From: Chiloscyllium plagiosum
Lineage: Eukaryota
Length of the DNA: 64,000 nt
Assembly (NCBI RefSeq): GCF_004010195.1
Contig: NC_057726.1
Span: 61,492,794-61,556,793, forward strand
Reading direction: 5' to 3'
Every line of letters begins with the position of its first letter. Position 1 is the stretch's first letter. Below, piece by piece: positions 15,251 to 57,161 of this stretch. The position numbers were made by a program, and so were the translations under genes. The notes below the pieces were generated by a model. The model saw only the letters and a program-made list of their open reading frames with translations, made no database searches and was not told where the DNA came from.

Positions 15251-15289
15251 TCTCCTGCTCTCAGCTTCCATTATCAATTAGTTAATCTT

Positions 15290-25245: not shown

Positions 25246-25435
25246 ATTTCATTTTACTTGTTAAGAATTTGAGGAATATTTTGATTCTTTTCACATTTAT
25301 TACACTTTGGGAATTAATACAGGTTGCAACCACACGTTTCCCCGTGTTTGGACAGTTGTTCAACTGCCTGTCTACTCTCTAAACCCAGATTGGAGCACTG
25401 GACCATTTCACTGTTGCCAATGTTTCCAGTCTTAC

Positions 25436-25729
25436 CTGGATTGACGGTGTAGTTGACACTGGCGGGTACAGGAAGGGAAACATGTGACACCAGACAGGTA
25501 TAAACCACTCCAGTCCTGACGGGATGCGCTTCTTCCAAAGAGCTGGAAACCTCATAAAGTCCATCTGCTGTCTTCTTCACGGTTTGTATACTGGTCAGAT
25601 TTTCGACACCATCTCTTCGCCAGGTGATACCGACAGGATCCGGGTAACAGGCAGCGGTTTTACACACGAGTTTCAAGGAATCGGCGGAAATCCCTTCAAC
25701 TTGAATGAGCTTCAGTGGCAACGGCGACA
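25436..25729 (-). CDS. Receptor copy B, Ig C1-set domain exon
   Basis: 294 bp, same splice sites as copy A, open frame, 4 aa differences from A. Confidence 0.9.
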
Positions 25730-26938
25730 CTTAAAGGAGAAAATAAAAATTTAATGGAATATCTCCTCATTTGACTACATCCGTGATGCTGTTACATTCA
25801 TAGCGTGACAATACTTATACTCATTATCGTTTAATTTTAAAATTGAAGTTTTCTATCCCCACAACAAAATAGCAGGAACATGCGAAACGATAAGCAAAGA
25901 GCTTGAATCTCCCAGGACTGGTAACACGAAGGAAGACAGACACAATGTTCGGAAAGAGATCCTGGAACGGGATTGGGTTTAGCAGCAGTCGGACCTCTGA
26001 GCAAATGTTTCGAAGACAGTATACCTCAGTGTGCTGCTGAATCCTTTCTCCCCTTAGCGCGGTAGGGAAGGTTTGCGGTACTGAACATTTTGTCTCGCAA
26101 ATTTCCCTAAAGCATATCCTGAAGAAGAGTCAAATCAAATTTCGAACGTTAACTCTATATCTCTCCGCAAATGCTGCCACATCCATTGGGATTTTTGTTG
26201 TTGACTTCCTCCTTTACACCTCACCCCTGCACCTTATCATTATTTTTTAGGTAGGGATAGCCATGACTGCCCCGGAGTCTCCTGCAGTGCATTCCAGATC
26301 CTTAGAAAACTTTGCTGAAAGACTTTGCTGACTGTTTTGGAAATTATCTTAAATTTGTATCCTCTGTTTGTTCTCCACCCATGGGAACAGCTTATCAGGT
26401 TTATACCGTCCTTAGCCTTGTTAATTACTGATCAGTGTGAAGTTCATAACATCCGCAAAGATGCAGAATCCAAGACGGAAAATTCCATTTCTGAGCGCAC
26501 GTCTTACAAAATTCCAGAGTTTTTGTACTTCCCTACATGACCCAGGAGATGTTAGAATTGTTCCCATTGTCGCACATCAACATGGTTACTTTGGAGAGAA
26601 GGGACAAATGCCTACTTAACTCATTGATTCATTCCAAACCAAAATTTAAACTTCTATTCTATGTCGTTATCTTCGTTTGTGAAGAATTATAAGTGAACAA
26701 AAATAACTGTTTGGAGATAAAACCCTTTCAAATATCAGGAGAGAAAACGAGTTAAATTGATCTTAAACTAAAGTACTCAAATAGCGAGAGTGAACCGGTT
26801 GCTGTTTAACACGAACTCAATGACAAAGAAACACAACTCAATTTAAAAGCAATTCGAAGAATCTTCACTTAGCGATAAAAAAATTGCACGTGTCTAATAA
26901 AACTGAAAAGCAGCCTATCCCGGTACAAGGATCCTTAC

Positions 26939-27244
26939 CGTAAACAGTCAGCTGTGTGCCACCTCCATCGTCAATCCACCTTCGCCGGTGCTTTACCTCA
27001 CAGAAATACACTCCGGCGTCAGCAAAACTGGCGTTTAGGATCTTAAAAGAACTTGTTCCCTTGATTGTATTGATTCGCTTTCTGCTGTCTGGCTCCAGAA
27101 ACGATTCCTCACCCCGTCTCCGCCAATAAACATCAGGAGTTTCTTCAAAGATAGGAAACATGCAGAACATGGAAACATTCCCACCTCTGGTGACGCTCAA
27201 CAACTTCGGGAACTGTTTCACTTTTCTCAAAGTTACTTCAGCCG
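26939..27244 (-). CDS. Receptor copy B, Ig VJ-type domain exon
   Basis: 306 bp, splice sites intact. 2 nt differences from copy A, both non-synonymous (K>E, N>I). Confidence 0.9.
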
Positions 27245-27960
27245 CTATCAGAAAAGAAAGAGTCACGATAATATTTGCAAACGAACATACACCACACGAA
27301 GTAAGATTAGGCCTTTCAGCCTCTTAAACCTGCTCGGCTAGTCAATAATTCTGTTCTGACTGCAGCTTCGACTCCGCTTTCCCGCGTATCCCTGAGAACC
27401 TTTCAACTCGTTGCTTGATGAGAATACGACAGACATAGGGAAAAAAGGACTTCGCGAATTAAAATGCAAGAACTGTTGAAAACTCTAGCAAAGTGGAGCA
27501 GCACAGTGTTTAATTGTACAACGCAGAGCTATTGCACCATCCTCTAAAAAGAATGCAAAAGATTTGGCGTAGGAGCATGTCGTAATGAAACGTACCTGTC
27601 CAAATTATGCCAAGGAGAGTCATATACGGTACTATAACTGTCACCAACATATTTTAGATTTTTAAAAACGTCGTTGGTTTGTTGTTGTAGATGTGGATAG
27701 TGTACTGAATGGTTTGGTAGGAAAATTATATCAAACCGATTACCATGATCTAAGATGTCACATGACAAGTGTTGCGTCCCAGATGTCTAGGAACTGGGAG
27801 GTTCCCTGATCACTACAGGTTGAGCAGATTCTATCTAATGGCAAAGTCTTGCTGACACTACCAGCTTTTCCATAATTTATCAACAACAATGTTCGTACCT
27901 TGGCTCAGTCTGAAAATAATTGTTCAGGTCGGAGGCATGGCCATGTCTCCAGTATCTCAC

Positions 27961-28015
27961 CTCCATGCAGGGCAGTGAGAGTGAGAAAATATTTAGCCTG
28001 GGCCTGAAAGTCCAT
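27961..28015 (-). CDS. Receptor copy B, leader exon MDFQAQAKYFLTLTALHG(A)
   Basis: 55 coding bp, donor GAG/gtgaga, phase 1. Homologous to 19937-19991. Confidence 0.75.
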
Positions 28016-40352: not shown

Positions 40353-40493
40353 TCAGCTTCTTTTGTTCGTTGCCAGCTTTATATCTGCATATACTGTGCA
40401 TTTGTCCAGAGATATAGGTGGTGATTTGTGTTTTGGAATTAGCAAGCTTCAAGTGGCATACGCCAAATTGTCATCTCGGCTTCCTTGTTTAGT
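40353..40493 (-). pseudogene. Receptor copy C, last exon: ITIM interrupted by TGA (LAYAT*), downstream ITSM TVYADI untranslated
   Basis: Acceptor tactttcacag identical to copy A. Reads TKQGSRDDNLAYAT*SLLIPKHKSPPISLDKCTVYADIKLATNKRS*, with TGA at 40449-40451. Same Tyr-Tyr spacing (23 codons) as copy A. Confidence 0.82.
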
Positions 40494-41869
40494 CTGTGAA
40501 AGTAATGTTTGATATCAATTGTTAGTGCATTGTCACTCACTACTTAAGATTATCATGGTTGAAAATAAAGGCTGTTAGCAAATTTCCTTTCAATTCCTAA
40601 TTTGCCTCATGACCTCTATCATGCAGAAGGACAAGAGAAAAAGATGCCTTGGGATGTCACTATCTCCATACTGACTTGGAATTATACCACTGCCCCTTCA
40701 CAGTCGCTGGTCAAAGTAATCAAACCTTTTCCTAACAGTATTATAGGTGTGTCAACACCACATGGAGTGCAAAGGTTCCAGACGACAACCAACTGTTATC
40801 TTCTCAAGATCAATTAGATGGGCAAGAAGTGTTGGTCTAGTCAGTGCTCCCCACATGTCATGAATGAATATGAACTTGAGTTAGAGCAATGTCGAGTCAC
40901 TAAAAACAGCATATGGCCTATCAAGTCTAAAGTCTTTTTGAGAGGTAAGTCAGTCATTCTACTCCTTTATTTGATGACTGTAGCCCTTCCCTGTAGCCCC
41001 TTTCATCAAGTGCTCATCCAATTCCCTTTTGAAACAATTGATGGTCTCTGCTTCCACCACCCTAATGGGCTATATGTTCCTGGCCAATATCACACAAGTT
41101 TCCTTGGATTTCCTCTGCATGTATTTACCAAAATCTCAAATGTATTTTCCCAAGATTTTGTGCTGTCAATTAGTGGGACAGGTTTTTCCTTGTCACCCTT
41201 ATCTAAAGCTACTATAATCTTGAACACCTCTATGATGTCATACCCTCAATCTCCTTTTATCAAGGCCAATAATCTCATCTTTTCCAAGCTGATCATGCAT
41301 CTACTATTTCTGATCTCGAATACTTACGTGGTGTATCCCATGTACACCCCCGGAGGACCTACGTTTCCTCAACTGTGATGACAAGAAGTTCATTCAGTAT
41401 TCTGCTCATTCAGAGTGCCCCTGCTCATTCATAGTATTTATTGATTTCTTTAAAAGTAGCCACTGATTGGTGGACTATAAACTACTTCTATTTGGAAATT
41501 CTTTTCCTTGCTTTTTCTCACCTCCACCCACAGATGTTTTGCCATATTTATTTTCTGAACAAAGGTGATTTCTCATGACTGTACTGCTCATACATTTATT
41601 AACAGAGCCATGTCCTTTGTTTTGATGCTGTCCTTATGTAAGGTCACACACTTTTAATATATATTATCCAGTTTTGGTTATCTTGCAAACACATCTCTAC
41701 AATGTTATCATATCGTAGCTGTTTTTCTGTAATCATGTGATCAATTCATCAAGCCTGTTACAAATTCTTGGTTTGAGACGAAAAAAACATGCAGATTCTG
41801 GAATCCAAGGTAGACAGTCAGGAGGCTGGAAGAGCACAGCAGGCCAGGCAGCCATCAGGAGGTGGAGGA

Positions 41870-44080
41870 GAGTTTACATGTTACTGAGGATTATATCTGC
41901 AATGAATGTCATTGGTTGCAAATCCGATCAGATCGAATGGATCAGTTAAAAAGATAGTTAGAGGCAATGCGGAATTTACAAGAGCAAGGGAATGTGATGG
42001 ATGGCAGTTGTGGGAAGCGGGGAAAGTCGCAGATCCAGTCACACAGATGGTTTAACTCTAGGAAAGGTAAGAGAGGTTGGCAGGTAGTGCAGAAGTCTTC
42101 TGTGACTATCCCCATTTCAAACAAGTATGCTGTTTTGGAAAATGCATGAGGTAATGGATTCTCAGGGGAATGTAACATGAACAACCAAGGTTTTGGTATT
42201 GATACTGGTTCTAATGTAATGAGGGGTACATGGGGTTCCAAGAGATCGATTGTGTTAGGTGACTCTCTAGTCCGAAGTACAGACAGATGTTTCTGTGGTC
42301 AGCAGTGGAAAATCAGAATGATTTGTTGCTTCCCTGGTGCCAGGACCAAGGGTGTCTCAGAGAGTGTGCAGAATGTTCTCATGGGGGATGGGGCCAGCAG
42401 AAGGTCATTGTACACATTGGAACAATGACAGAGGAAGGGAAAAGGATGAGATTCCGCAGGGAGATGACCGTGAGTTAGGCAGGAATTTAAAAAGGAGGTC
42501 TTCGAGAGTAGTAATATCTGGATTACTACCGGTGCTATGAGCTAGCGAGGCCAGGAATACGAGGATAGAGCAGATGAATGCAAGGCTGAGGAGCTGGTGA
42601 GGTACTGGTGAACTGGAGGTTGGCTAAAGTGGTGCCACAGTTTAAGAAAGGTGGTAAGGACAAGCCAGGGAAGTACAGACCAGTGAGCGTGATTTTGGTA
42701 GTGGGCAATTTGTTGGAGGGAATCCTGAGGGACAGGATGTACATGTATTTGGAAAGGCAAGGACTGATTTGGAATAGGCAACATGGCTTCGTGTATGGGA
42801 AATCATGTCTCACAAACTTGATTGAGCTTTTTGAAGAAACATCTCTATGATTATGACTCTAAGTTACAAAGAGGATTGATGATGGCAGAGCAGTAGACGT
42901 GATCTATATGGAACTCAGTAAGGCGTTTGACAAACTTCCCCATGGGAGACTGGTTAGCATGTTTAGAGCTCATGGAATACAGGGAGAACTAGCCATTTAG
43001 ATACAGAACTGGCTCAAAGGTAAAAGACATAGGGTGGTCGTGGAGGCTTGTTTTTCAGACTGGAAGCCTGTGACCAGTCAAGTTCTACAAGGGTCGGTGC
43101 TGGGTCCACTACATTTCATCATTTAGATAAATAATTTGGATGTGAGCATAAGAGGTATAGTTAGTAAGTTTGCAGATAACACCAAAATTGGAGAGGTAGT
43201 GGACAGCAAAGATAGTTACCTCAGATTATAACGTGATCTTGATCAGAAGGGCCAATGGGCTAAGAAGTGGCAGATAGAGTTTAATTTAGATAAATGCGAG
43301 GTGCTACACTTTGGAAAAGCAAAGCTTAGCAGGACTTATATACTTACTGGTAAGGTCCTAGGGAGTGTTGCTGAGCAAAGAGACCTTGGAGTGTAGGTTC
43401 ACAGCTCCTTGAAAATGGAGTTGCAGGCAGATAGGATAGTGAAGAAGGCGTTTGGTATGCTTTCCTTTGTTGGTCAGAGTATTGAGTACAGGAGTTGGGA
43501 GGTCATGTTGTGGGTGTACAGGACATTGGTTAGGCCACCGTACAATTCTGGTCTCCTTCCTATGGGAAAGATGTTGTGAAACTTGAAATGGATCAGAAAA
43601 GATTTACATGGATGTTGCCAGGGTTGGAGGATTTGTGCTATCGAGAGAGGTTGAATAGGCTGGGACTGGTTTCCCTGCAGCGTCAGAGGCAGAGGGGTTT
43701 CCTTATAGAGGTTTATAAAATCATGGTGGGCATGGATCAGATAAATACACAAAGTATTTTCCCTGGTGTAGGGGAGTCCAGAACTAGAGGGCATAGGTTC
43801 AGAGTGAGAGGGGAAAGATATAAAAGGGAGCTAATGGGCAACTTTTTCACACAGAGGGTGGTATGTATATGGAACAAGCTGCCAGAGGAAATGGTGGAGC
43901 CTAGTAGAATTGCAACATTTAAAAATCATCTGGATGGGTATATGAATAGGAAAGGTTTAGAGCGAGATGGACTGGGTGCTGGCAGGTGGGATTAGACTGG
44001 GTTGGGTTATCTGGTCGGCATGGACAAGTTAGACCAAAGTATCTATTGCCGTGCTGTACGTCTCTGTGACTCTATGACTC
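41870..44080 (+). mobile_element. CR1-clade LINE with ORF1 esterase remnant joined to the RT/3' region, inserted in a short PLE-derived element (41780-44160)
   Basis: IVLGDSLVR...CCFPGA (SGNH/GDSL-like ORF1), NWRLAKVVPQFKKGGKDKPGKYRPVS (RT), tail tgactctatgactc. Confidence 0.9.
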
Positions 44081-45234
44081 GAAGTCGACATTTCAAATGT
44101 AACCTGAAGAACGTTTACATCCGAAACGTCGACTCCTCCACCTCCTGATGCTGCCTGGTGTCAGTTACGAATTCTGTCTACTTCAGCAGAACAGGCCTTA
44201 GTCTGACCTTTTGCATCATCTTTTGACAAGACATGTTGACTTGTGCTAATCATACTACACATTTCTAACTGCATTTTTTATACTCTTTTAATAATATGTT
44301 GCAGAAGTTTGTGAAGGAATAATAACAGGTGAACGGCCCTGCAGTTCCCTGTTTTCCCTTGCTTTTTCCTTGAAAGTGAAGTTATATTTTCCAACTCTCA
44401 ATCTGATGTGAATACTTTTGGAAATAAGGAATTTTGTTTGACCATTGTTCACATAGATATCTTCATTTCCTGTGAAAATGTCTGTTGTCTGTGTATGGGT
44501 GCAAATATTTACTTTGGCATCTCTTTTTTTGTATACTTAATAATGGTCTTACAATCAAATTTTATATTTTTAGCTAGTTTGCTTTCCCCCCCCATTTTAT
44601 CAATTTTTTGATGCATTCTAATATCAGATTTAATTTCTTGAGTGAGTCATGGATGATTTTTGGCTGAGTTTTTATTATTTAACTAACTGAATTTTGCTCT
44701 GCATCTTGAATTGTGTCTTTAAATCCTTCCCACTGTGCATTTAAGTATCAGCATAACAAAGTTATATAATCAACCTATTTTCACTGCATTTTGATATAAT
44801 TGATATTGCTTAAGTTTATGATTGAAGTTCATGATTGGAACTTTGGCAAACCTTACTAATTAATAAAACATTATAATTATAATTAATAATAATTATGATA
44901 GCTAGATAGAATAGTTATCTATGATAACTTCATTCAGAGGCAGCTGTAAAATGCATTGCTGCATGAAGTGATCACAAAAAACTCTGCAAATTTCTCTTCC
45001 AGATTGTCCTTTAAAAAATGTAATTGACACTCCCGATGTGAAGGGTAAATTCACCCAGGACAAATACATTTCCTTTGTGTCAAGCTGCAAAGGTTTAGTT
45101 CAATGTTTGGTCCACAATATACTTTCTGTCATGTGTTCTAAAAACTGCTCCTGCTATCATTTTCTGACTCCCGATATTTCCATTTACCACGGAGTGTGAT
45201 TCTGTTTTGTGATTTTCTTTCCAATGTTGCTGCA

Positions 45235-45470
45235 ACAGGTTCGATTCCAGCCTTGGGTGACTGTCTGTGCGGAGTTTGCACATTCTCCCCATGTCTGCGT
45301 GGGCTTCCTCTGGGCGATCTGGTTTCCTTCCACAGTCCAAAGATGTGCGGGTCAGGTGGATTGGCCATTCTAAATTGCCCATAATATTAGGAGAATTAGT
45401 CAGAGAGAAATGGGTCTGGGTGGGTTACTCTTCGGAGGGTTGGTGTGGACTGGTTGGGCCGAATCGGGAA
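45235..45470 (+). mobile_element. HE1-type SINE
   Basis: ggttcgattccagccttgggtgactgtctgtgcggagtttgcacattctccccatgtctgcgtggg (B-box-like start plus HE1 core). Confidence 0.85.
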
Positions 45471-47031
45471 ACTATTCTAAAAAAAATCCTTATTATGAGA
45501 GCCACCTTCCACTTTTACAATGCTGAATTCCTCTTGCAATGTGTGTACCTTGGAATATATATTCCCCAACCTTGGTCACCTTTTAGTCATATCTCAACAG
45601 TAGCGATCCAATCAATTTACAATGCCTATATTTGTGTAATTAACACACCTATTTTCTTGAAGATGCTTCATGCATTTAGAAGAAAAGAGCCTTTAATTTC
45701 ACTACTTTACTTCTTATTCTTGCATTGACTTTATTCACAGATGCAGAACTGAAGCTAACTCACAGTCCCATCCTGTTTTTTTCAAACTACATCTCTCCAT
45801 TGTTCTATTGTCTTCATGTCTTATTCTATCTCTTTGGATTGCTCAATCTCGGTTCACCATAACTGTCTCTCTCTACTACTTTAACACCTGACTACAGCTC
45901 TTGTTATAGCAATTGTCCCACTGAGTTTAAGTCGTGCCCACATAAATGAAATGGCTTCCTGTTTCGCAAATGATCAAAACCCTTTTGTCCAACAGCATTG
46001 CTTGAACCATATGTCGAAGTCTCTAATCTGCTGTATGCTATGTCAACTGGTAACAGGCCAGAGATTATTACCTGATAATTTTTCCACTTTTAATTTGGGC
46101 ATTTACTTTTAAAACTCAGCAGAGCATTATTCCTTGCATTGGTTTCTATGACAACTAGATCGTCCCATCTCACTACAGGTTCCTTCAAGGTCATGGGGAG
46201 ATGACCTTAATCTTGGAACAAGGCATGTCACACAGCAATTCAAGTTCCCAGTGATGATGCTCATAATTTGGCGGGTTGTGCTATGCAAGTGTTTCAATTT
46301 AGCAACTAAGCACCTGGGAATTTCCTATTTTTTAAGCTGTTTGAATTATAAAGATTAGAATGAGAAGTCTCTTCTTTAATTTACCTGCCTGAAAGCAGGT
46401 CCTAGTTAATTCCCAGAGACAGAAAAGTGCTTTTCTGGCAGGGCAAGGAAATAGACATTGAGTTTACTTCATTCAGAATGTACACACAATAAGAATGTAA
46501 CTGCCAGAAGAGAGTGCAGAAGAGATTTACTAGAATGGTGTCAGGAATGGGGAACTTCAGTAATCCTGGGTAGACTAGACAATTTATGATTGAATTGCGC
46601 AGGGCAGAGAAAAACAAAGGGATGATTGCTTAAAGTTTTTTACAATTACGAGAGATTTCAATAAAGCAAAAATGAGTTCAATTGTTGATCTGTCAGCATG
46701 CAGAGGATAAATTTACAATTACTGATAGAATAACTATGGGATTTTGAAGATTTATTTTGTGGAAACCTCTATAGTACTTTTGAATATCTGGCAGAAGCAA
46801 AGTCAGTAGAAATTTTTTCAAAAATGAAGAAAAGATTACCTATAAATGCAAAAATACAGAGCGAGGGACAAAGAGTGAGGAGTTGGGCTGATTGATTAGT
46901 TATTTTCTAAGACCTACGCAACAGTGACAGTCTCCTTTAGTCTATGATTCAATAAATGTTCTCAGCTGATTGCAATACTTCTTGCTATTCCTTCATAACT
47001 GTTCTTCTATGAAGAAAGATTATGCCCTTAC

Positions 47032-47075
47032 CAGCTGTTGAGTTTCATCCACTTCCACAGAATGTTTCCTAACAC
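47032..47075 (-). pseudogene. Receptor copy C, small cytoplasmic exon (G)VRKHSVEVDETQQL, downstream of the premature stop
   Basis: Acceptor cttttctttcctttag as in copy A, donor CTG/gtaagg, 44 bp, phase 1-0. Confidence 0.78.
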
Positions 47076-47149
47076 CTAAAGGAAAGAAAAGAAATCTATA
47101 CTGAATGTAAAATATAATAACACAATTATAGCAATGAATAAATGAATAT

Positions 47150-47640
47150 ATTGAAGCTGATTCAGAGGAGGCTTACTCGATTGACATTTGGAATTAACTG
47201 GTTGTTTCATGAGGATAGGTTCAATAGACTCGGTTTCTTTCCACTGGAGTTTGGAACAATGAGGGGTGATCTGATTGCAGTGTATCAGTTACTGAACCAT
47301 TTGACAAGATGGACATAGAAAGAATAGTTTCTTTTGTGGATGAATCCAGAACAATGGGACACAGTTTACCAATTAAAGATTGTCCTTTAGAGACAGAGAT
47401 GTGGAAGGTTTCTTTTATCTTAGAAAATTGTGCCAGTTTGGAACTCCCCGCTCCAGAAGGTGATCGTTGAATATTTTAAAGGCTGTAGTACTTGGATTCC
47501 TGTTAGACAAGGGAAATGAATGGTTACTGGGGGCTAGTTGGGAATGTGGAATACCAAACACGAACTGATCAGTGATAACCTTATTGAGTGATGGTGGGTC
47601 TGGAGCAGCTGGTTGGTCGACTTGTGCTTTTAACTCATAT
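47150..47640 (+). mobile_element. Old CR1/L2-clade LINE 3' fragment
   Basis: Nucleotide similarity to LINE 3' ends (ccactggagtttggaacaatgaggggtgatctgattg). Confidence 0.6.
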
Positions 47641-47699
47641 ATACTGTATGCTTGTGGTAATAATGTATTGAGTGCACAATCAGCAATAGTGATCTGCAT

Positions 47700-48431
47700 T
47701 ACAAAGATCTAGAGCTCAGTGTGGAGTACATTGTCTTCCCAAATCCTGCCTTGGTGCTAATCACAACAGAGTAGACTCTTCCTCTTGTGGGAGAGTGAAT
47801 TGACAGTTTAGTTTGCGTTGCAAAATTACTTTCTACATAACAATTGGGAGTAAAATGAACCAGATTGACATAGTGATTGTAACCAGGTTGATATTATTGA
47901 CTGTATGATCTTTGATTGGGGTTGTAACCCTGGCTGACCAATATAAACAGGGGATTCTGGATGTCCCTGGAGAAGGAACACTTGGTGTCTACCAATAACC
48001 TAGAGGTTTTTATGATGAGGTTGGCACCATAGTGTGTGGAGTGTTTTATTCCCCCCTCTGATTCTATTTTGATTTAATCTCTACCCTTCCTTTCACTTTT
48101 TCAATCATGTTGGAATTGCCCCTAAGGAGCATTGGCTACTCGGTGCTTTTTCTTCCTGGTGATGGAATATGAATAATGTTTTCTGCACTCGTTCTTTCTT
48201 CTCTGTGTCCTACACCTCCATGCACACAATATGGGTGCTGGGGAGAAATGAGCACTACTGCTGTTTGGTGGTAGCATGGAGGATTGAGAAAAAAAAAAAA
48301 TTAACATGGGACTTAGGATCTCCTTAATTCATGGACTGACTCTGGGCTGGATGGCAACAGCCAGTGTACTGTACACATGTAAATAAAGGGCAATTTGGTG
48401 ACAGTATACCAGCCTCTGTGTCGTTATTTCA
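47700..48431 (+). mobile_element. Possible solo LTR, interrupted
   Basis: TATA-like atataaa at 47941, then tgtaaataaaggg...cctctgtgtcgttatttca ending in CA. Left boundary uncertain. Confidence 0.35.
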
Positions 48432-48855
48432 GTTAGCTATTCCGATATCACTTTAAAATGAGTTCACTGGCACTGCTACTTTTAGAACTGGGTTGGGGTG
48501 GGAGTAATTTGTTTACAAAATTGACCAATTAGTTTGAATGGGGGTTGAAATAAATCCGGTTTATATTGTCATGTTGAATTGCCAAACTGCTTGTGACATC
48601 AACTTCATTCTTTAAAGATGTAGAAAGGTGTTCACTATTCCCGTATAGTTATTCACTTTTCATCTGCTCTTTATGTCTTCTAACAAATAAAATTGGCTCT
48701 TGGAAGATGAAACATATTCAATAGAATAACAAAATAGAAGTTCATAGAAGTTCATAGAATATGCACATCTGGTATATGAATGCTGGTAAACTGTCACCAA
48801 ATATCATTGGGACTTGGAAACTAAAACTATTCAGCAAAATAACAAACATTCTTAC

Positions 48856-48961
48856 CAGCTGATGCCTTTAACTCAAGTCTTGTTAAAATGATTATCAATA
48901 GTAAAATTGCCAGAATGCCACCTGCCCATCTAGAGATAATTGAGATAATTGAGATCTTTAC
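48856..48961 (-). CDS. Receptor copy C, TM-homologous exon with +1 frameshift: reads (G)KDLNYLNYL-stop; TM (SRWAGGILAILLLIIILTRLELKASA) is out of frame
   Basis: Acceptor attctatag and donor CTG/gtaaga conserved, but the exon is 106 bp against 105 in copy A. TAG at 48930-48932; tandem CTCAATTAT repeat at the indel. Confidence 0.82.
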
Positions 48962-49464
48962 CTATAGAATTAATAACACTTGAATAAGAAACTGCAGAGT
49001 ACAGCGTGATTTAGACACAGAGAATCATGATTCAGACACAGGAAGGCGATCTGCAAAATAGTATCCCAGGACGATCACATCCAATAAACATCAATAGAGA
49101 CTGATCCTTTTTATTTCAATGTGTAGTATGTGTAAAACGATTATAAGATGTATCGCATGACATATAAGTCACAATCCCACAATACAATTTATGGAGGGAA
49201 CAATTCCATAGAGATTGAGGAATCTTGACTCCTGGTCATTTCTTAAGAGGAAAAACAGTTACACATTATTGATCTCATCGTGTTACACCAGCACCAGCTG
49301 GAAAACATCATCAGATTTAACTTTCCCTGTAACTTTTGTCAATTAATACATACATCTTGCTTTCATTTAACTCGTTTAACATGACAAAGCATCCAATGCT
49401 TTACAGAGGACTGTTATCAAGCAGTCCAGCCACATAAGGCACATTAGAACAAATGGATCACAAA

Positions 49465-52400
49465 CAGAAACTCCTGGAGCAAATCAGCTGGTCCAGCAGC
49501 ATCTGTGGAGAGAGAAACTGATTAAATAATTTGAGTCTAGGGGCCCTTCTTTAGAACTGATAGCAGCTAGGAAAAAGTGGTATGTATGCTCAAGACAAAT
49601 ATTGGGATATGGAGAGTGGAGGTGGAGAAAGGGGTGAGCAGAAAGGCAGAGATGGAGCCAAAAGAGAGAGAACAGCATTCGGACAATAAAAAAGGATGGA
49701 TGACAACATGCCAGGAAAATAAAAAGCTGACATTGGTGATCATAACTAGATGAAAATTGGTTGACTGTGCTGAAAGCAGCTCATGTCATTGCCAGGATCT
49801 GCGGTGTGAGTATCAGGCTGCAATATCCGCAAGTGGAAAATGAAATGCTGCTCTTCCAGCTTGCACTGCGGCTTGATGCATCACTGCAGCAGGTCTGAGA
49901 CAGGAATGTTTGCCAGGGAACATGGTGGTATGCTGAAGTGGCAGCAACTGGAAACTCATTTTTAAGGACAGAATGAAAGTTTGATTGCAAAGCTGTTGCC
50001 TGGTCTGCATTCTGTCTCACCAGTGTATAGGAGACAACATTGTGAGCTGTGAATATAATATATAGGTATTCACTGCTTCACTTCGAAGCTGTGTCTGGAT
50101 TAGAGTGTGAGGAGGAAGGAAGTAAATGGGCTACCACAATATATAACCTACTAATATCTTCTTCCCAAAATCTAGCAACAGGAATGGCAGGGCAGAGCCA
50201 CTGTTCCTGCCACACAGACCTAATCTCTTCATACCTTGATTCAACATTTTCTCCCATTCTCAGCTCAGTTCCCATTAATATCCATGATTTATGTGAAATT
50301 TTGCATCTGTTTAGAGTTTCCAGTTTGTGGGCAGCAACTGCCTCATCTTCATTTTGGATGTACAATGCGTTTACACATCCACCTTCTGTCATGGTGGTTT
50401 TATGGTTCCCCACTTGAACTGTCCCTATTCACCAACCCTCTTCTATCTGGCCAAGGTTGTCCTCACTTTGAAGAACATCTCCTTTTCCTCCTCTCACCTT
50501 CTTCAGATCAAAGGTTCGGCTATAGATACCTGCATGGTCTTCAGTTCTGTCTGTCTCCTTGTAGGGTACATGGAACTTCCCTTATCCTTATCCCATTCAG
50601 GTCCTGCCCCACAACTCTTTCCCTGTTCCATCGATAATTCTTCAGTGCTTCTTCTGACTCTCATCAAAAACTGGAAAAATTGATTAATTTCACTTTCAAT
50701 TTCTATCCTGCTGCTACCTTCTCCTAGTTCATCTCTGACTCCTCCCTTCCCTTCCTCGATTTTGTATTTCTTTTTCTGGGTATATGTCTGGCCACCAATT
50801 TTCATTACAAACTCACCAACTTCCACAGTTACATGGGCTATCAGTCCTCACACTGCAAATCCTGTAAAGACTCCTTTCCATTCCAAGTTCTCCATTTGTA
50901 TCACATCTGTTCTGATGATACTACCTTCAGTAGAGGGGTCACAGAAATGTCCACATTTTTTCTCATCCAAGGATTCTCTGCTACATGTTTAAGAGGGCCT
51001 TCAGCCATTTCTGATCCATCTCCCATTCTTCTGCCCTCACTCATCTTCTTCCACAATACCAATAGGGTCTTCGTTGTCAACTTCCAGCTCACCTCCCCCA
51101 AAGTCACCATTTCTGACACCTCCCACGGGATGCCACCACCAGACACACATGCTTTTCCCCTCCATTGCCACCAATTTTCCACCCTTGCCCACTCATCCTC
51201 CACTCCCAACATACCCTTACACTCCCATGTCAGCTTGCCATGCAGAAGGTGCAAAACTTTCCCATTTACTTTCTCCATCCTCACTATCTAATGTCTCAGA
51301 TGCACCTTGCAGGTAGGGCACTGATTTACCTGCACTTTACTCAATCTAGTCTCCTGTATTCTTTGCTCATAATGTACTCACCTCTAAATTGGGGAGACAA
51401 AACACAGATTGGCTTGTTCTGTCTGCAAAAATGTCCCCTGAGCTTCCAACTGCTTGCCGCATCAACAGATTACCATGGTCCCAGTCAACAACTCTGTCTC
51501 GGGCCTGCTGCAGTACTCCAGTGAAGCTCAGTGCAAGATAGAAGAACAGTACCTCATTTTCCACATGGGGATCATGTAGTCTTCAGCACTCAATGTCCAG
51601 TTCAATAATTTTAGGACCTGAACATTTATTCCATGAATTTTACCCTCCCCCACACCCCAAGATCCCTTTGCCTGCCAAACTGTCATTGTCTCTGGGTTCC
51701 ATCTCCGCCTATCTGTTCTCTCCCTCTCTCCCACACCAAACATGGCTTCAGCAAAAATACCACCCTTTCCTAGTTGCTATCAGTTCTGAAAAATGGTCAC
51801 TGAACTCAAAATATTAACTCTGCTTTCTCTCCAGAGATGCTGGCAGGCTTTCTGAGTTTCTCCAGCATTTTCTCTTTTTTTCCAACATCCACAGTTCTTT
51901 GTTTTGTTTGGATGGCAGGTTATAACTACTGGAGTGCCATAAGGTTTGGTCCTTTGACCCCAGCTATTTACAATCTACATTAACGACTTGGAAAGAGAGA
52001 TCGAATGCCCTATAGGCAAATTTGCGGAAGACACAAAAATGAGCAGGATGGTAAATTGCAATGATGAAATAAGAACCTTACAAATAAATATAGATAGGTA
52101 AGGAGAGTGGGCCAATATGTGGCAGATAAATGGCTAAGTGGCTGATTGTGAGGTCATGCATTTGGCTCAGAAAAATGGGAAAACGACCTATTATCTTAAT
52201 GGGTAGAGACTTCGTGGTGCTCTGGTGCAGATGGATTTAGGTGTACTCATTCATGAGTCAGAGAAAACTGGCATGAGGTACAGTGAATACTAAAGAAAGC
52301 GAATGGAATGTTGGCTTTTATAGCTTCAAGAAAATAATATAAAGGTAGGGAAGTATTGTTACAACAGTACAAGGTATTGTTGAGATCGCGCCTGGAGTGT

Positions 52401-52890
52401 TGTGCACAGTTTTGGACCTCTTACTTGAGGAAAGATGTAATGGCATTGGAGAAAGTTCAGAGGAGGTTCATGGATTGATCCCAGAGATAAGAGGTTTGTC
52501 ATATGAAGAGGGATTGTACAATTGAGGCCTTTACTCACTGGAATTTCGCAGAATGAGGGGAGATCAAATTGGGGTATTCAAGATGATAGAAGGCATAGAT
52601 AAAATAGACGTGGACGAATAGAGTCATGGAGATGTACGGCTCAGAAACAGATTCTTCGGTCCAACTCGTCCATGTTGACCAGATATTCCAACTCAATCTG
52701 TTCCCACCTGCCTGCAGCTGGCCCATATCCCTCCAAACCCTTCCTATTCATATATTTATCCAGATGCCTTTTACGTGTTGCAATCGTACTAGCCTCCACC
52801 ACTTCCTCTGGCAGCTCATTCCATATACATACCATGCTCTGCATGAAAACGCTTCCCCTTAGGTCTCTTTTATATCTTTTCCCTCTCACC
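49465..52890. mobile_element. PLE remnant with inverted left part (~49465-51905) plus CR1 fragments (~51910-52890), in the C1-TM intron of copy C
   Basis: PLE RT-like remnant (QIKGSAIDTCM, cf. QxxGxAMGT.M); CR1 3' peptides; paralogous to 22789-25245. Confidence 0.75.
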
Positions 52891-53079
52891 CTAATTTCAT
52901 TTTACTTGGTAAGAATTTGAGGAATATTTTGATTCTTTTCCCATTTATTACACTTTGGGAGTTAATACAGACTGCATCCACACCTTTCCCCGTGTTTGGA
53001 CAGCTGTTCAACTGCCTGTCTACTCTCTAAACCCAGATTGGAGCACTGGTCCATTTGTTGCCAATGTTTCCAGTCTTAC

Positions 53080-53373
53080 CTGCATTGACGGTGTAGTTGA
53101 GACCGGCAGGTTCAGGAAGGGAAACATGTGACACCAGACAGGTATAAACCACTCCGCTCCTGACGGGATGCGCTTCTTCCAAAGAGCTGGAAACCTCATA
53201 AAGCCCATCTGCTGTCTTCTTCACGGTTTGTATACTGGTCAGATTTTCGACACCATCTCTTCGCCAGGTGATACCGACAAGCTCCGGGTAACAGGCAGCG
53301 GTTTTACACACGAGTTTCAGGGAATCGGCGGAAATCCCTTCAACTTGAATGAGCTTCAGTGGCAATGGCGACA
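53080..53373 (-). CDS. Receptor copy C, Ig C1-set domain exon
   Basis: 294 bp, splice sites intact, open frame, 6 aa differences from copy A. Confidence 0.92.
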
Positions 53374-54464
53374 CTTAAAGGAGAAAATAAAAATTTAATG
53401 GAATATCTCCTCATTTGCCGACATCCGTGATACTGTTACATTCATAGCGTGACAATACTTATGTTCTTTATCGTTTAATTTTAAACATTGAAGTGTTCTA
53501 TCCCCACAACAAAATAGCAGGAATATGTGAAACGATAAGCAAAGAACTTGAATCTCCCAGGACTGGTAACACGAAGGAAGACAGTCAGAATGTTCGGAAA
53601 GAGATCCTGGAACGGGATTGGGTTTAACAGCAGTCGGACCTCTGATAAAATCTTTCGAAGGCAGTACACCTCTTTGTGCTGCTGAATCCTTTCTCCCCTT
53701 AGTATAGTTGGGAAGGTTTGCGGTACTAAACATTTTGTCTCGCACATACCTTAAAACATTTCCGAAAGAAGAGTCAAACCAAACTAGAAACGCTAACTTC
53801 ATCTCTCTTCACAAATGCTGCCAGATCCACAGCAATTCTCTTTGCTTGTTTCCTCTTTTTCAGCACATCCCTGCAGCTTTTAAAGTTTTTTCCCTGATAG
53901 GTATAAAGTTCCCTTTTGTCTGCTAAGATTGCACCAAGGTGTCCGGTAGTGCCCTCCAGATCCTTACAAAACTGCTGTTAATGATTTTCTGACTGTTGTA
54001 CGTGACTGTTTTGCAAATTATCTGAAATCTACGTCCTCTGTTTGTTCTTCACCAATGGGAACAGCTTATCTGGTGTATACTGTCCTTTAACCTTTAACAG
54101 ACGTGAATCAGTGTCCGTACAACCTGTAGGTATCATATAACCTGAGATATGGGGCCTTGTTAAGTTTGCATTATTTGTGAGATTATTGAGGAACAATTTG
54201 ATGTTTTCCTTATGTGCATACTTTTCTAAAAATTGCAAAACATAAAATACCATAAAATATGGTCATTATCAATTTGCAAGTTTCGTTACATTTTATGGTC
54301 AACAGAACTGCATTAAGTGCATAGCCCAGACTCAGGATTGCGTCATTCTTTAACCCTGGATCTACGTTAGTTAAGGGTGGCAAATATGTGATCCAGGAGA
54401 TGTTAGAATTGTTCCCACTGTCACATGTCGGCATGGTCACTTTGGAGAGAAGGGATCTTGTCTT

Positions 54465-55790
54465 CGAGTCATAGAGTTGGACAGAATGGAAACAGGCTCT
54501 TCGGTCCAACTCATCCCTGAGAAGCAGATATCCCAACCCGTCCCACCTGCCAGCTTTCGGCCCATATCCCTTGAAACCCTTCCTATTCATATATCCATCC
54601 ATATGCTTTTAAGTGTTATAATAGTGCTAGCCTCCACCACTTCCTCTGGCATCTCATTCCATATACATACCACCCTTTGCGTGAAAACGTTACCCCGTAA
54701 GCCTCTTTTATAACTTTCCTCTCTCACCCGAAACCTATGCTCTCCAGTTCTGTACTCCCACACCCCAAGGAAGAGACTTTGTCTATTTATCTGATTCATG
54801 CCCCTCATGATTTTTATAGACCTCTATAAGGTCACCTCTCAGCCTCCATCGCTCCAGGGAAAACAGCAGCAGCTTATTCAACCAAGCGCCGTTACTTGTG
54901 GCACTTCAGTGGTCACAGGCCTCCAGCGAGAAAAACGACCCTCCACCACCACCCTCTGGCTTCTTTCTTTGAGCCAGTTCCGTATCCAAATGGCTAATTC
55001 TCCCTGTATTCCATGAGATCTAACCTTGCTAACTGGTCTCCCATGTGGAACCTTGTTGAACGCCTTACTGAAATCCATATAGCTCATGTCCACCGCTCTG
55101 CCCTCATCAATCCTCTTTGTTACTTCTTCAAAAAACTCCATCAGGTTTGTTAGACATGATTTCCCACGCACAAAGTCATGTTGACTGTCCCTAATCAGTC
55201 CTTGCCTTTCCAAATATATGTGTATCCTGTCCCTCAGGATTCCCTCCAATAATTTGTCCACCACCGATGTCAGGCTCACTGGTCTATAGTTCCCTGGCTT
55301 GTCCTGACCACCCTTTTTAAACAGTGACACCACGTTAGCCAGCCTCCAGTCTTCTGGCACTTCACCTGTGACTATCGATGATCCAGATATCTCAGCAAGG
55401 GGCTCAACAATCCCTTCCCTAGCTTCCCACAGAGTTCTAAGGTACCCCTGATTAGGTCCTGGGCATTTATCCACTTTTATGCGTTTCAAAACATCCTGCA
55501 CTTCCTCTCCTGTAAAATGGACATTTTTCAAGATGTCACCATCTATATACCTACATTCTATACCTTCCATGTCCTTTTCCACAGTAAATACTGATCCTGT
55601 GGTTCCACACAAAGACCGCCTTGTTAATCTTTGACGGGCCCTGTTCTCTCCCTAGTTACCCTTTTCTCCTTAATTTATTTGTGAAAACATTTTGGATTCT
55701 CCTTAATTCAACTTGCCAAAGCTATCTCATGTCCCCTTTTTGCCTTCCTGATTTTCCTCTTAAGTATATACCTACTGTCTTTCTAAACCT
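54465..55790 (-). mobile_element. CR1-clade LINE fragments inserted in the V-C1 intron of copy C only
   Basis: 244-aa RT ORF piece (VPEDWRLANVVSLFKKG...YRPVSLTS...YMDFSKAFNKVPH). Absent from copies A and B at the homologous site. Confidence 0.92.
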
Positions 55791-56099
55791 CATTGAGTCA
55801 TTCCAAACCAAAATGTAAACTTGTATTTCAGTATCATGTTTTGATAAGAATTGCAACTGGACAAACATAAAGCTGTTTGGAGATACAACCGTTCCAAGTA
55901 TCAGGAGAGCAAGCGAGTTAAATTGATCTTAAACTAAAGTACTCAAATAGCGAGAATGAATCGGTTAACATGAACTCAATGACAAAGAAACTACGAGCCA
56001 ATGTAAAAGCAATTTGAAGAACCTTCACCTAACGATAAAAAAATTTGCACGTATCTAATAAAACTGAAAAGCAGCCTATCCCGATACAAGGATCCTTAC

Positions 56100-56405
56100 C
56101 GTAAACAATCAGCTGTGTGCCACCTCCATCGTCAACCCATCTCCGCCGGTGCTTTACCTCACAGAAATACATTCCGGCGTCAGCAAAACTGGCGTTTAGG
56201 ATCTTAAAAGAACTTGTTCCCCTGTTTGTATTGATTCGCTTTCTGCTGTCTGGCTTCAGAAACGATTCCTCACCCCGTCTCCGCCAATAAACATCAGGAG
56301 TTTCTTCAAAGATAGGAAACATGCAGAACATGGAAACATTCCCACCTCTGGTGACGCTCAACAACTTAGGGAACTGTTTCACTTTTCTCAAAGTTACTTC
56401 AGCCG
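56100..56405 (-). CDS. Receptor copy C, Ig VJ-type domain exon
   Basis: 306 bp, splice sites intact. 7 nt and 4 aa differences from copy A by hand count. Confidence 0.92.
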
Positions 56406-57127
56406 CTATCAGAAAAGAAAGAAAAGCCAAGTTAATACACTGTATTTGATAAGAACATATACCACACGGAACAAGATTAGGCCGTTCAGCCTCTCAAACC
56501 TGTTCGCTATTCAATAATTCTGTTCTGATTGCAGTTCAAATCCGCTTTCCCGCGTATCCCTGACAACCTTTCAACCCGTTGCTCGGTAAGAATAGGATAG
56601 ACACAGGGCAAAGAAAAACCTTAGCGAAGTAAAATGCAAGAACTATTGAAAATGAAAGCGATCGAAGTGGAGCAGAACAGTGTTTGATTGTACAATGTAG
56701 AGCCATTGCAGTATACAATAAAATAGGGCATAACGGATTTGGTGTAGCACCATTTAACAACTGAACGTACCTGACCCAATGATGCCAAGTAGAGTTATGT
56801 ACTGTACTGTAACCCTCAGCAACATACTTCAGATTTTATTAAAAAGGTTCATTTGTTTGTTTTTGTAGATGAGGATAGTGTACCGAATGGTTTGGTTGGA
56901 AAACTTTCTCAAGCATATGACCATGACAAGAGATATCAAATGACGAGTGTTGAGTCCCAGAAGTCTGAGGACTTCCGCCGACTGAGCAGTTTCTACCTGA
57001 AGGCAAAGTCTTGCTGACATTATCCGCTTTTCAATAATTTATTAACAACCGCCTTGGCTCAGTCTGAAAATAATGGTTCAGGTCGGAGGCATGGCCATGT
57101 CTCCAGTATCTCACCTAAAGTATTCAC

Positions 57128-57161
57128 CTCCATGCAGGGCAGTGAGAGTGAGAAAATCCAT
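57128..57161 (-). CDS. Receptor copy C, shortened leader exon MDFLTLTALHG(A)
   Basis: Homologous to the A and B leaders with an in-frame 21-bp deletion; donor GAG/gtgaat, phase 1. Confidence 0.7.

What the first reader, a model, noticed from the sequence alone, without database searches (positions are those of the whole stretch)
40353..57161. Paired-receptor system: copy C keeps a near-identical ectodomain but has lost membrane anchor and inhibitory signalling
Seen: the V and C1 exons are open with intact splice sites. The TM exon has one extra base (106 vs 105 nt), giving ...GKDLNYLNYL-TAG before the hydrophobic stretch, and the last exon has TGA inside the ITIM. Inference: as assembled, copy C encodes a secreted VJ-C1 protein nearly identical to the ectodomain of inhibitory copy A, i.e. 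a soluble decoy. The stop lies about 75 nt upstream of the next junction, so NMD is a risk unless intronic polyadenylation is used. A young pseudogene is the alternative. Established: clustered inhibitory, activating and soluble paralogues typify SIRP, LILR, KIR, Siglec and NITR loci.
Basis: partly seen in the sequence, partly recalled or inferred. Interest (0 to 1): 0.85.

Follow-up and report, generated by a model that had tools for sequence, protein, structure and literature searches.

The report
Shark paired receptor: ITIM-less copy, frameshift allele
The third copy of a shark immune-receptor gene looks anchorless only in this assembly, because three other DNA samples of the species lack the extra base, so it is more likely a membrane-bound partner that lost its inhibitory tail than a secreted decoy.

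Summary
Copy C (minus strand, 57161-40353) has open V and C1 exons with intact splice sites, a 106-nt TM exon that stops after ...NYLNYL, and a TGA inside the ITIM of the last exon.

The extra base is not a feature of the species. In 3 of 3 DNA runs laid on the locus (3 samples, 2 studies), one letter is missing at 48940 or 48942, at full depth. That gives a 105-nt, in-frame TM exon with an Arg near its outer end.

The soluble-decoy reading is therefore not supported. The window haplotype carries either a private null allele or an assembly error. Its stop lies 74 nt before the next junction, so nonsense-mediated decay (NMD) is expected.

My best reading is that copy C is the ITIM-less, Arg-in-TM, activating-type partner of inhibitory copy A. 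It would derive from an inhibitory ancestor, as described for KIR (PMC2213150). A gene in early decay is the main rival.

I saw no RNA evidence: 0 reads fell on the exons in one scRNA run. The TGA could not be checked in reads.

The gene belongs to a VJ-C1 receptor family found only in cartilaginous fish among the names I looked up, and named only by automatic annotation. First readers of this scan noted similar VJ-C1-ITIM genes elsewhere in this genome; none has been followed up.

The parts
57128..57161 (-). Copy C leader exon. The ATG is at 57161 and the donor is phase 1. It is 21 nt shorter, in frame, than copy A's leader (19991-19937), which leaves a short signal peptide.
   Evidence: Alignment of the 5' ends of A, B and C; coordinates. 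The signal-peptide pattern was compared by eye with homologues fetched.
56100..56405 (-). Copy C V exon (VJ type, with a germline-joined J-like G-x-G-T-x-L-x-V motif), 306 nt, phase 1-1, open.
   Evidence: Pfam V-set E 2.9e-10. 299/306 identical to A and 297/306 to B.
54881..55651 (-). Reverse-transcriptase fragment of a retroelement inside intron 2 of copy C. It is not part of the receptor.
   Evidence: ORF of 257 aa; Pfam RVT_1 E 3.6e-13.
53080..53373 (-). Copy C C1-set exon, 294 nt, phase 1-1, open.
   Evidence: Pfam C1-set E 2.3e-8. Best solved relative is the UrIg2 chain 9dmx_A, E 3.3e-11.
48856..48961 (-). Copy C TM exon. It is 106 nt in the window (frameshifted) and 105 nt, in frame, in 3 of 3 other DNA runs.
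   Evidence: The 3'-frame reading of the unchanged window sequence 48857-48940 matches the TM of Heterodontus francisci XP_067906045 at 22/28 residues.
48938..48942 (-). Multi-allelic microsite that carries the extra base. In the window, unit 2 of a degenerate 8-9-nt tandem array is identical to unit 1 (9 nt). Two other in-frame alleles are seen in the reads.
   Evidence: tables 3 and 4: 48938 A>C in X1, X3 and X4; 48940 T>G and 48941 T>C in X3 and X4; one letter left out at 48940 (X1) or 48942 (X3, X4). The repeat is visible.
48930..48932 (-). Premature TAG of the window allele. It lies 74 nt upstream of the TM-exon donor, with two exon junctions downstream.
48929..48931 (-). AGA (Arg) codon in the frame used by the 105-nt alleles, about 5 residues into the hydrophobic segment. 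Copy A and the Heterodontus homologue have Gly here.
   Evidence: No listed difference at these places in X1, X3 or X4, but not all differences were listed.
47032..47075 (-). Copy C cytoplasmic exon 1, 44 nt, phase 1 to 0, open, AG/GT kept. Copy A's counterpart is 12483-12449 (35 nt).
40353..40493 (-). Copy C last exon. It holds 14 codons and then TGA (40451-40449) at Y+3 of the ITIM. An ITSM-like remnant (TVYADI, 40397-40380) and the ancestral stop (40355-40353) follow in the same frame.
   Evidence: The DNA homology to copy A continues one base out of frame after the Tyr codon and returns to frame about 25 nt later.
10263..19991 (-). Copy A, the intact inhibitory partner: leader, V, C1, 105-nt TM exon, 35-nt cytoplasmic exon, and a last exon with ITIM (VSYAVL) and ITSM (TVYSEV).
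22789..27970 (-). Copy B: leader, V and C1 exons only. Its 3' part runs into the N gap 22289-22788.

Best explanation
Copy C is the third gene of a tandem cluster of non-rearranging VJ-C1 receptors of a shark.

In the species at large its TM exon is 105 nt and in frame. The gene then encodes a membrane-anchored receptor with three features:
- an ectodomain kept about 95% identical to inhibitory copy A by gene conversion;
- an Arg, derived from Gly, in the outer third of the TM helix;
- a cytoplasmic tail of about 38 residues, cut by a stop codon inside the ITIM.

This is the architecture of an activating-type, or at least non-inhibitory, partner that arose from an inhibitory ancestor.

The haplotype in the window carries one extra base. 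It arose where unit 2 of a short degenerate tandem array became a copy of unit 1. The resulting stop lies 74 nt before the next exon junction, so this allele should be a null removed by NMD, or else the base is an assembly error. It is not a secreted decoy.

Shown here: the exon anatomy, the in-frame state in other samples, the homogenised 5' half against the old 3' half, and family membership.
Inferred: the Arg pairs with an ITAM adaptor, the gene is expressed, and the TGA is fixed.
For: 1; in 3 of 3 DNA runs (3 samples, 2 studies), the single contig over the site lacks one letter, at all of the depth; both read-supported alleles are 105 nt and open through the exon, reading ...NYL(M/L)ISRW... 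followed by the hydrophobic core.
2; the TM core of copy C matches a Heterodontus francisci homologue at 22/28 residues, against 20/34 for copy A. The exon has therefore been conserved for a long time. Arg replaces a Gly that is present in both copy A and Heterodontus.
3; the stop sits inside the ITIM, with an ITSM remnant behind it in the same frame. The Tyr-to-Tyr spacing is the same (23 codons) as in copy A.
4; the cytoplasmic exon 1 is open and keeps its splice sites.
5. V exon A-C 299/306 identical, with only 3 synonymous changes, against 580/707 for intron 1. This points to gene conversion of the binding domain, as in paired receptors.
6; other members of this family in at least 7 cartilaginous-fish species have Arg at the outer TM end and a short tail.
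7. [quoted passage not shown]
Against: - No RNA support. In run X21 (12,955,460 records, about 2 in 100 of the run), 92 reads were laid. All 92 fitted only partly, and the depth lay in 7 of 30 bins that coincide with bins of very high DNA depth (repeats). The bins holding the TM exon and the C1 exon had zero depth.
- The TGA and the leader deletion were not checked in other individuals.
- Copy C's TM is of the inhibitory type, not the (D/E)H-ended TM type seen in most Arg-bearing family members. The Arg could therefore be an incidental change in a gene under relaxed constraint.
- The leader lost 7 codons, which may weaken secretion.
- The C-specific changes in V plus C1 are 7 synonymous to 9 non-synonymous, too few to show constraint.
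- One search listed only the best-supported differences (111 more not shown). Only 1 of 4 (X1), 5 of 7 (X3) and 4 of 6 (X4) single-letter differences of the contigs over the exon are known to me. The frame is certain; the exact residues are not.
- Contigs can drop one allele of a heterozygote, so the 106-nt allele is not excluded from those three animals.
Confidence: 0.5

Rival explanations
1. Copy C is an inhibitory gene in early decay, a young pseudogene. The tail frameshift and TGA, the shortened leader, the Gly-to-Arg change and a segregating TM frameshift are all symptoms of relaxed constraint. The V and C1 exons look healthy only because gene conversion from A and B keeps overwriting them.
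For: - Three or four potentially disabling changes sit in one gene.
- The synonymous divergence of the V exon is far below the intron divergence. Conversion alone, without selection on C, could explain the open exons.
- There are no RNA reads.
- The last exon is no better conserved than its flanks: 64% to copy A over a 250-nt block.
Against: - The TM frameshift is not fixed: 0 of 3 other runs show it.
- All splice sites, the cytoplasmic exon 1 and the TM core remain intact, although the 3' half is only 63-74% identical to copy A.
- The TM core matches Heterodontus at 22/28 residues.
- The two lesions that are not shown to be private, a TM charge and a stop in the ITIM, are exactly the pair that turns an inhibitory receptor into an activating one (PMC2213150).
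Confidence: 0.3
2. One reading: copy C encodes a secreted VJ-C1 protein, a soluble decoy for the ligand of copy A, made from the 106-nt allele, with intronic polyadenylation to escape NMD.
For: - As assembled, the frame stops before the hydrophobic segment.
- Soluble forms do occur in the family. A predicted Narcine bancroftii isoform (P0019) lacks the TM segment.
- The TM exon is phase 1-1, so skipping it keeps the frame.
Against: - The extra base is absent in 3 of 3 other DNA runs.
- The stop lies 74 nt before the next junction and 118 nt of exon before the last one, so NMD is the default expectation.
- No poly(A)-primed read ends in either intron outside repeats.
- The rest of the gene (TM core, cytoplasmic exon, splice sites) is kept, which a dedicated soluble form would not need.
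Confidence: 0.05
3. The extra base is an assembly or polishing error, and the sequenced animal has a normal 105-nt exon. This concerns only the nature of the lesion. It is compatible with the best explanation's view of the gene.
For: - No read set supports the 106-nt form: 0 of 3 runs.
- The site lies in a short tandem array where consensus callers can misalign.
Against: - The window differs from the nearest read allele (X1) by a substitution plus an insertion, not by a homopolymer length change.
- The site already has two other alleles among three runs, so it is truly variable.
- The window haplotype differs from the runs by 0-2.7% in the contig pieces listed (table 8). It is a distinct haplotype that the three runs may simply not contain.
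Confidence: 0.3

Closest known systems
Activating KIR (short-tailed KIR) derived from inhibitory KIR; KIR2DS4 full-length and deleted forms
   Same: - An inhibitory ancestor.
- A positive charge gained in the TM, and a stop codon introduced within the membrane-proximal ITIM (PMC2213150, passages read).
- An ectodomain shaped by gene conversion with neighbours, and a variable balance of 'full-length' and 'deleted' forms (PMC2768862, title and abstract start in the listing).
   Different: - KIR have C2/I-type D0-D2 domains, not VJ-C1.
- KIR use Lys and DAP12; here the residue is Arg near the outer TM end, with an unknown partner.
- Function, expression and ligand are untested here.
SIRP family (SIRP-alpha, -beta, -gamma). 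NCBI names the homologues 'tyrosine-protein phosphatase non-receptor type substrate 1-like'.
   Same: - An N-terminal V domain with a J-like strand, followed by a C1-set domain.
- Inhibitory, activating and tail-less paralogues in one cluster.
- SIRP-alpha (2wng) is the fifth best solved match of a family profile, E 1.1e-26, covering V plus C1.
   Different: - One C1 domain here, not two.
- UrIg2 and an IgA1 heavy chain score better than SIRP. SIRP is not among the best 60 for either single exon.
- Orthology is not shown. The name is automatic annotation.
UrIg / UrIg2, non-rearranging VJ-C1 genes of elasmobranchs
   Same: - Germline-joined VJ plus C1-set domains in cartilaginous fish.
- Best solved match both for the C1 exon (E 3.3e-11) and for the family profile (E 1.6e-33 over V plus C1).
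   Different: [quoted passage not shown]
- The words ITIM and SIRP do not occur in that paper's text.
- Here there is one C1 domain, ITIM/ITSM tails and tandem paired copies.
Other paired Ig-superfamily receptors with antigen-receptor-like V domains (teleost NITR, hagfish APAR, chicken PRARP)
   Same: Recalled, not tested here: VJ-type V domains on ITIM-bearing or charged-TM partners in multigene clusters.
   Different: Recalled: NITR and APAR lack a C1-set domain. I could not read the PRARP paper. It appears only in the reference list of PMC10751288, and a search for PRARP found no primary paper on it in the library.

Membership tests
Paired inhibitory/activating Ig-superfamily receptor cluster (functional class) | Tandem paralogues with closely similar ligand-binding domains | tested here: met
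   V exon 299/306 and C1 exon 281/294 identical between A and C. The three copies lie within 47 kb.
Paired inhibitory/activating Ig-superfamily receptor cluster (functional class) | One partner carries ITIM/ITSM in its tail | tested here: met
   The last exon of copy A reads VSYAVL ... TVYSEV. This is motif level only.
Paired inhibitory/activating Ig-superfamily receptor cluster (functional class) | The other partner has a basic residue in the TM and a short tail without ITIM | tested here: met
   Met for the 105-nt alleles of 3 of 3 DNA runs, together with the TGA in the ITIM of the window. Not met for the window allele itself, which is frameshifted before the TM.
Paired inhibitory/activating Ig-superfamily receptor cluster (functional class) | The activating partner associates with an ITAM adaptor, and the two partners signal in opposite directions | not testable with these tools
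   Needs co-expression and signalling assays.
SIRP family (orthology) | Ectodomain of V plus two C1-set domains | tested here: not met
   There is a single C1 exon between the V and TM exons in A and C. Homologues such as P0017 also go from one C1 domain straight to the TM.
SIRP family (orthology) | Closest sequence relative among characterised proteins | tested here: not met
   SIRP-alpha ranks fifth in the profile search, behind UrIg2, an IgA1 heavy chain and two other chains. It is absent from the best 60 for the single exons.
UrIg / UrIg2 | VJ followed by several C1-type domains (nine in nurse-shark UrIg2) | tested here: not met
   There is one C1 exon here. UrIg2 architecture is taken from PMC12227049.
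Unitary pseudogene | Disabling lesions fixed in the species | tested here: inconclusive
   TM frameshift: not fixed, 0 of 3 other runs carry it. TGA in the tail and leader deletion: not tested in reads.
Unitary pseudogene | No transcription or no spliced mRNA | tested here: inconclusive
   There were 0 reads on the C1 or TM exon in about 2% of one scRNA run. Reads of A or B that are at least 95% alike would also have been laid on the C1 exon, so the whole family is silent or unsampled there.
Secreted decoy receptor | A stop or polyadenylation before the TM segment as the regular product | tested here: not met
   The stop depends on a base absent from 3 of 3 other runs. No poly(A)-primed reads end in the introns outside repeats.

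The most novel reading that the evidence does not exclude
Copy C is caught in the act of an inhibitory-to-activating switch in an antigen-receptor-like (VJ-C1) family of sharks. It gained a TM arginine and a stop codon in the ITIM, while its binding domain is kept matched to the inhibitory neighbour by gene conversion. Functional and null (frameshift) alleles coexist on divergent haplotypes, as with human KIR2DS4. That would place the paired-receptor arms-race logic, including presence/null polymorphism of the activating partner, in the oldest living jawed vertebrates and on the domain architecture thought ancestral to Ig and TCR.
Probability: 0.2. Interest if true: 0.7.

Novelty: new member of a known kind. 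Interest (0 to 1): 0.4.

Why it matters
This would be a concrete example, in a cartilaginous fish, of how an activating partner is born from an inhibitory receptor. The two changes, a TM charge and a stop in the ITIM, are the same pair reconstructed for primate KIR, here on a VJ-C1 scaffold related to antigen receptors.

It also corrects an attractive but wrong reading. The 'soluble decoy' rests on one base that other animals of the species do not have. That is a caution for any annotation of this locus made from the reference alone.

I found no paper on this chondrichthyan VJ-C1 ITIM/Arg-TM family in the full-text searches. It carries only automatic names.

Tried and rejected
- Middle cytoplasmic exon. 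The A/C-similar block at 10901-11095 / 41183-41377 was considered. I rejected it because its translation looks like the tail of the retroelement copies seen elsewhere in the window and has stops in all frames. The real exon is the 35/44-nt one.
- Rescuing the frame of the 106-nt exon with a nearby alternative acceptor. By reading the sequence, no AG lies in a position that would restore the frame.
- dN/dS on V plus C1. There are only 16 C-specific changes (7 synonymous, 9 non-synonymous), too few to separate constraint from drift.
- RNA evidence. The one RNA run laid (X21) gave only partial hits, in bins that the DNA depth marks as repeats. Neither the run search nor read laying could be repeated, because each is capped at one call.
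- UrIg/UrIg2 membership. Rejected on architecture.
- SIRP orthology. Rejected on domain number and ranking.
- The phmmer search. It gave 223 proteins with E up to 0.001. The top ten are giant multi-Ig proteins of 1346-6980 aa with 9-27 matched stretches each, which I set aside as generic Ig repeats. I looked at all 56 proteins under 520 aa in hand, and at the names of 20 clusters. Of these, 19 were named and all 19 came from cartilaginous fishes; 1 was an unnamed ENA entry.
- The crude motif and hydropathy classification. It examined 45 fetched proteins that carry a C1 hallmark pattern, 33 of them with a TM. It is noisy: it counts isoforms separately and counts juxtamembrane Lys/Arg. I use it only to say that Arg-in-outer-TM, short-tail members exist.
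- Supplementary files of the papers were not opened. Figures and supplements of PMC12227049 may list further VJ-C1 genes that I could not see.
- The joined spliced protein model was not searched with any tool. All searches were exon by exon or with stored database proteins.

Full report
WHAT IS IN THE WINDOW

The window carries three tandem paralogues on the minus strand (self-comparison, open frames).
- Copy A lies at 19991-10263.
- Copy B runs from 27970 down to the N gap at 22289-22788.
- Copy C lies at 57161-40353.

The three N runs were left untouched.

I fixed the exons of copy C by alignment with A and B and by splice motifs:
- leader, 57161-57128;
- V exon, 56405-56100 (306 nt);
- C1 exon, 53373-53080 (294 nt);
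- TM exon, 48961-48856 (106 nt);
- a small cytoplasmic exon, 47075-47032 (44 nt);
- last exon, from 40493.

The phases are 1-1-1-1-0. They match copy A exon for exon; A's TM exon is 105 nt and its small exon 35 nt.

Pfam calls the two ectodomain exons V-set and C1-set. The V exon ends in a germline J-like motif.

THE OBSERVATION

- Read from the C1 donor, the TM exon gives ...NYLNYL and then TAG at 48932-48930, 74 nt before the exon's donor.
- The last exon gives ...NLAYAT and then TGA at the Y+3 position of the ITIM.
- V and C1 are open and nearly identical to copy A: 299/306 and 281/294 nt, with 4 and 6 amino-acid differences.

- In the other frame the whole 106-nt exon is open. It encodes a normal hydrophobic segment preceded by Ser-Arg-Trp (unchanged window sequence 48857-48940).
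- In the last exon, the DNA homology with copy A continues one base out of frame right after the Tyr codon and returns to frame about 25 nt later. An ITSM-like TVYADI therefore sits behind the stop in the original frame, and the Tyr-to-Tyr spacing is 23 codons in both copies.

THE DECISIVE TEST

The run search listed 24 runs.
- 8 are DNA-type runs of the same species label, holding 0.43-0.56 of the sampled words.
- 12 come from two related labels and hold 0.12-0.21.
- No holder is on record as RNA. Two raw-read single-cell poly(A) RNA runs carry the species label.

I laid X1, X3 and X4 (samples S1, S2, S3; studies P1, P2) and the RNA run X21 on 47401-53400. All three DNA runs cover all 30 bins.

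At the TM exon, each DNA run has one contig:
- X1 record 2, 48673-48967;
- X3 record 11, 48798-49147;
- X4 record 19, 48735-49012.

Each contig lacks one letter relative to the window. It is 48940 in X1 and 48942 in X3 and X4. In every case the depth carrying the deletion equals the whole depth at that place. In addition, 48938 A>C is seen in all three runs, and 48940 T>G and 48941 T>C in X3 and X4.

Applying these differences gives two alleles. Both are 105 nt long and both are open through the exon, with Leu-Met or Leu-Leu before Ile-Ser-Arg-Trp and then the hydrophobic core.

The window version differs in that the second unit of a degenerate 8-9-nt tandem array is a perfect copy of the first. 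That is how a slipped or templated mutation would look.

Caveats on this test:
- Table 3 shows only the best-supported differences (111 more not shown). I know only 1 of 4, 5 of 7 and 4 of 6 single-letter differences of the three contigs. The frame is certain; every residue is not.
- Contigs can drop one allele of a heterozygote.
- I could not identify the assembly's own reads. X1 differs from the window by up to 2.3% in single contig pieces.

RNA

From X21, 12,955,460 records were read, about 2 in 100 of the run.
- 92 reads were laid, and all 92 fitted only partly.
- Depth is found in 7 of 30 bins. Those bins coincide with the bins of very high DNA depth, which marks them as repeats.
- The bins holding the TM exon (48801-49000) and the C1 exon (53001-53400) have zero depth.

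Reads from copies A or B that are at least 95% alike would also have been laid on the C1 exon. The family as a whole is therefore silent or unsampled in that slice. This says nothing specific about copy C. It also gives no support to intronic polyadenylation.

HOW THE GENE IS BUILT HISTORICALLY

The 5' half of copy C is 82-98% identical to A and B.
- The V exon (97.7%) stands out against intron 1 (580/707, 82%) and against the first 110 nt of intron 2 (88%).
- There are only 3 synonymous differences in the V exon. Purifying selection alone cannot explain that, but gene conversion can.

The 3' half is far older: 73.8% over the TM block, 64.4% over the last-exon block, and about 63% between them. 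Even so, it keeps every splice site and an open 44-nt exon. Its TM core matches the Heterodontus francisci protein XP_067906045 at 22/28 residues, better than copy A does at 20/34.

So the signalling half of copy C was under constraint for most of its history. Its lesions are recent. The Arg is derived: copy A and Heterodontus both have Gly at that place.

FAMILY

A phmmer search of 1.84 billion representatives with the V exon gave 223 proteins with E up to 0.001.
- The top ten hits are giant multi-Ig proteins, which I set aside.
- The single-domain hits of 130-420 aa share leader, VJ, one C1 domain and a TM, with tails carrying LxYAxL-type and xVYAxV-type motifs.
- I looked up names for 20 clusters. 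19 are named and all 19 come from cartilaginous fishes: Scyliorhinus, Heterodontus, Mobula, Narcine, Hypanus, Hemitrygon, Mustelus, Carcharodon, Chiloscyllium, Leucoraja, Heptranchias and Callorhinchus.
- The names are automatic: 'tyrosine-protein phosphatase non-receptor type substrate 1-like', 'NCR3LG1-like', 'tapasin-related-like' or 'uncharacterized'.

Members with an Arg at the outer end of the TM and a short tail occur in several of these species, for example P0012, P0050, P0069, P0095, P0112 and P0126. One predicted Narcine isoform lacks the TM segment.

A profile of 12 members finds UrIg2 (9dmx) first, at E 1.6e-33 over V plus C1. An IgA1 heavy chain and two other chains follow, and SIRP-alpha (2wng) is fifth, at E 1.1e-26.

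[quoted passage not shown] SIRPs have two C1 domains (my recall). This family fits neither by architecture.

My full-text searches for the family found no description of it. The PRARP paper that might be relevant is not in the library; it appears only in the reference list seen.

MECHANISM

I commit to the following, with about 0.5 confidence for the whole chain. Copy C normally makes a membrane receptor that binds what copy A binds. It cannot recruit phosphatases, because its tail stops inside the ITIM. Its TM arginine lets it pair with an ITAM adaptor.

- That Arg near the outer TM end goes with FcR-gamma-type adaptors is my recall, supported only by the abstract start of PMC8102735 in the listing.
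- The window allele is then a null. Its stop lies 74 nt before the TM-cyt1 junction, with a further junction downstream. By the usual 50-55-nt rule (established knowledge) this predicts NMD.
- Frameshifted would-be activating receptors are noted for Ly49 (PMC2213150). A balance of full-length and deleted forms is noted for KIR2DS4 (PMC2768862, listing).

The rival I take most seriously, at 0.3, is a gene beginning to decay while conversion keeps its first exons clean. The decoy reading gets 0.05.

Whether the extra base is a real allele or an assembly error is a separate question. I put it at about 0.7 to 0.3 for a real allele. My reasons are that the change is a substitution plus an insertion, not a homopolymer slip; that the site is multi-allelic; and that the window is a distinct haplotype.

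VERDICT

The soluble-decoy inference is not supported. What remains is a plausible activating-type member of an undescribed shark VJ-C1 paired-receptor family, with a null or erroneous reference allele. It is a new member of a known kind, of moderate interest.

First readers of this scan noted comparable VJ-C1-ITIM genes on other pieces of this genome. Those notes are unchecked, and I did not test them.

Noticed in passing
window 47401-53400: The window haplotype differs from the contigs of X1, X3 and X4 by 0-2.7% in single-copy pieces. X1 and X4 share a long run of the same differences, for example at 47449-47710. This suggests divergent haplotype lineages at this receptor cluster.
   Followed up: no
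window 53217-53366 (C1 exon of copy C): At places where copy C differs from A or B in the window, other animals show the A or B state. 53280 A>G is seen in 3 of 3 runs (Leu to Pro, the state of copy B). 53320 G>A is seen in X1 and X4, 53366 T>C in X1 and partly in X3, and 53282 C>A and 53217 T>G in X1 only. So the 'diagnostic' differences of copy C are partly polymorphic, as expected with ongoing gene conversion. The X4 depth of 36.5 hints that paralogues may be collapsed there.
   Followed up: partly
window 57128-57161 versus 19937-19991: Copy C's leader exon lacks 21 nt, in frame. That removes the N-terminal part of the signal peptide and leaves Met-Asp followed by a short hydrophobic run. 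Copy B instead lacks 13 nt at the donor but keeps a phase-1 GT.
   Followed up: partly
window 52601-53000: A very high-copy repeat, with summed contig depth of 4e5 to 1.2e6 in the DNA runs. It is also the main place where the poly(A) RNA reads landed, some with A-runs in their loose ends. It behaves like a SINE-like element and sits about 190 nt downstream of the C1 exon, in intron 3.
   Followed up: no
window 32366-32692 and 33219-33545; 32898-33302 and 33746-34459: Identical 109-aa open frames, and near-identical plus-strand frames, recur about 850 nt apart. This is a local tandem duplication between copies B and C.
   Followed up: no
window 54881-55651 and 21552-22264: Retroelement pieces. 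The first is a reverse-transcriptase fragment (Pfam RVT_1, E 3.6e-13) inside intron 2 of copy C. The second is a pair of 200-220-aa proline-rich open frames next to the N gap, with no Pfam match.
   Followed up: partly
P0019 (Narcine bancroftii XP_069757175, isoform X4): A predicted isoform of a family member goes from the C1 domain straight into the ITIM tail without a TM segment. The TM exon is phase 1-1 in copies A and C here, so exon skipping would keep the frame. That is a route to soluble forms that needs no frameshift.
   Followed up: no
window 22289-22788 and 28595-29542: Assembly gaps flank copy B. Its TM and tail exons, if they exist, would fall in or beyond the first gap. The similarity of copy C to copy B starts exactly at the gap edge, 22789.
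   Followed up: no
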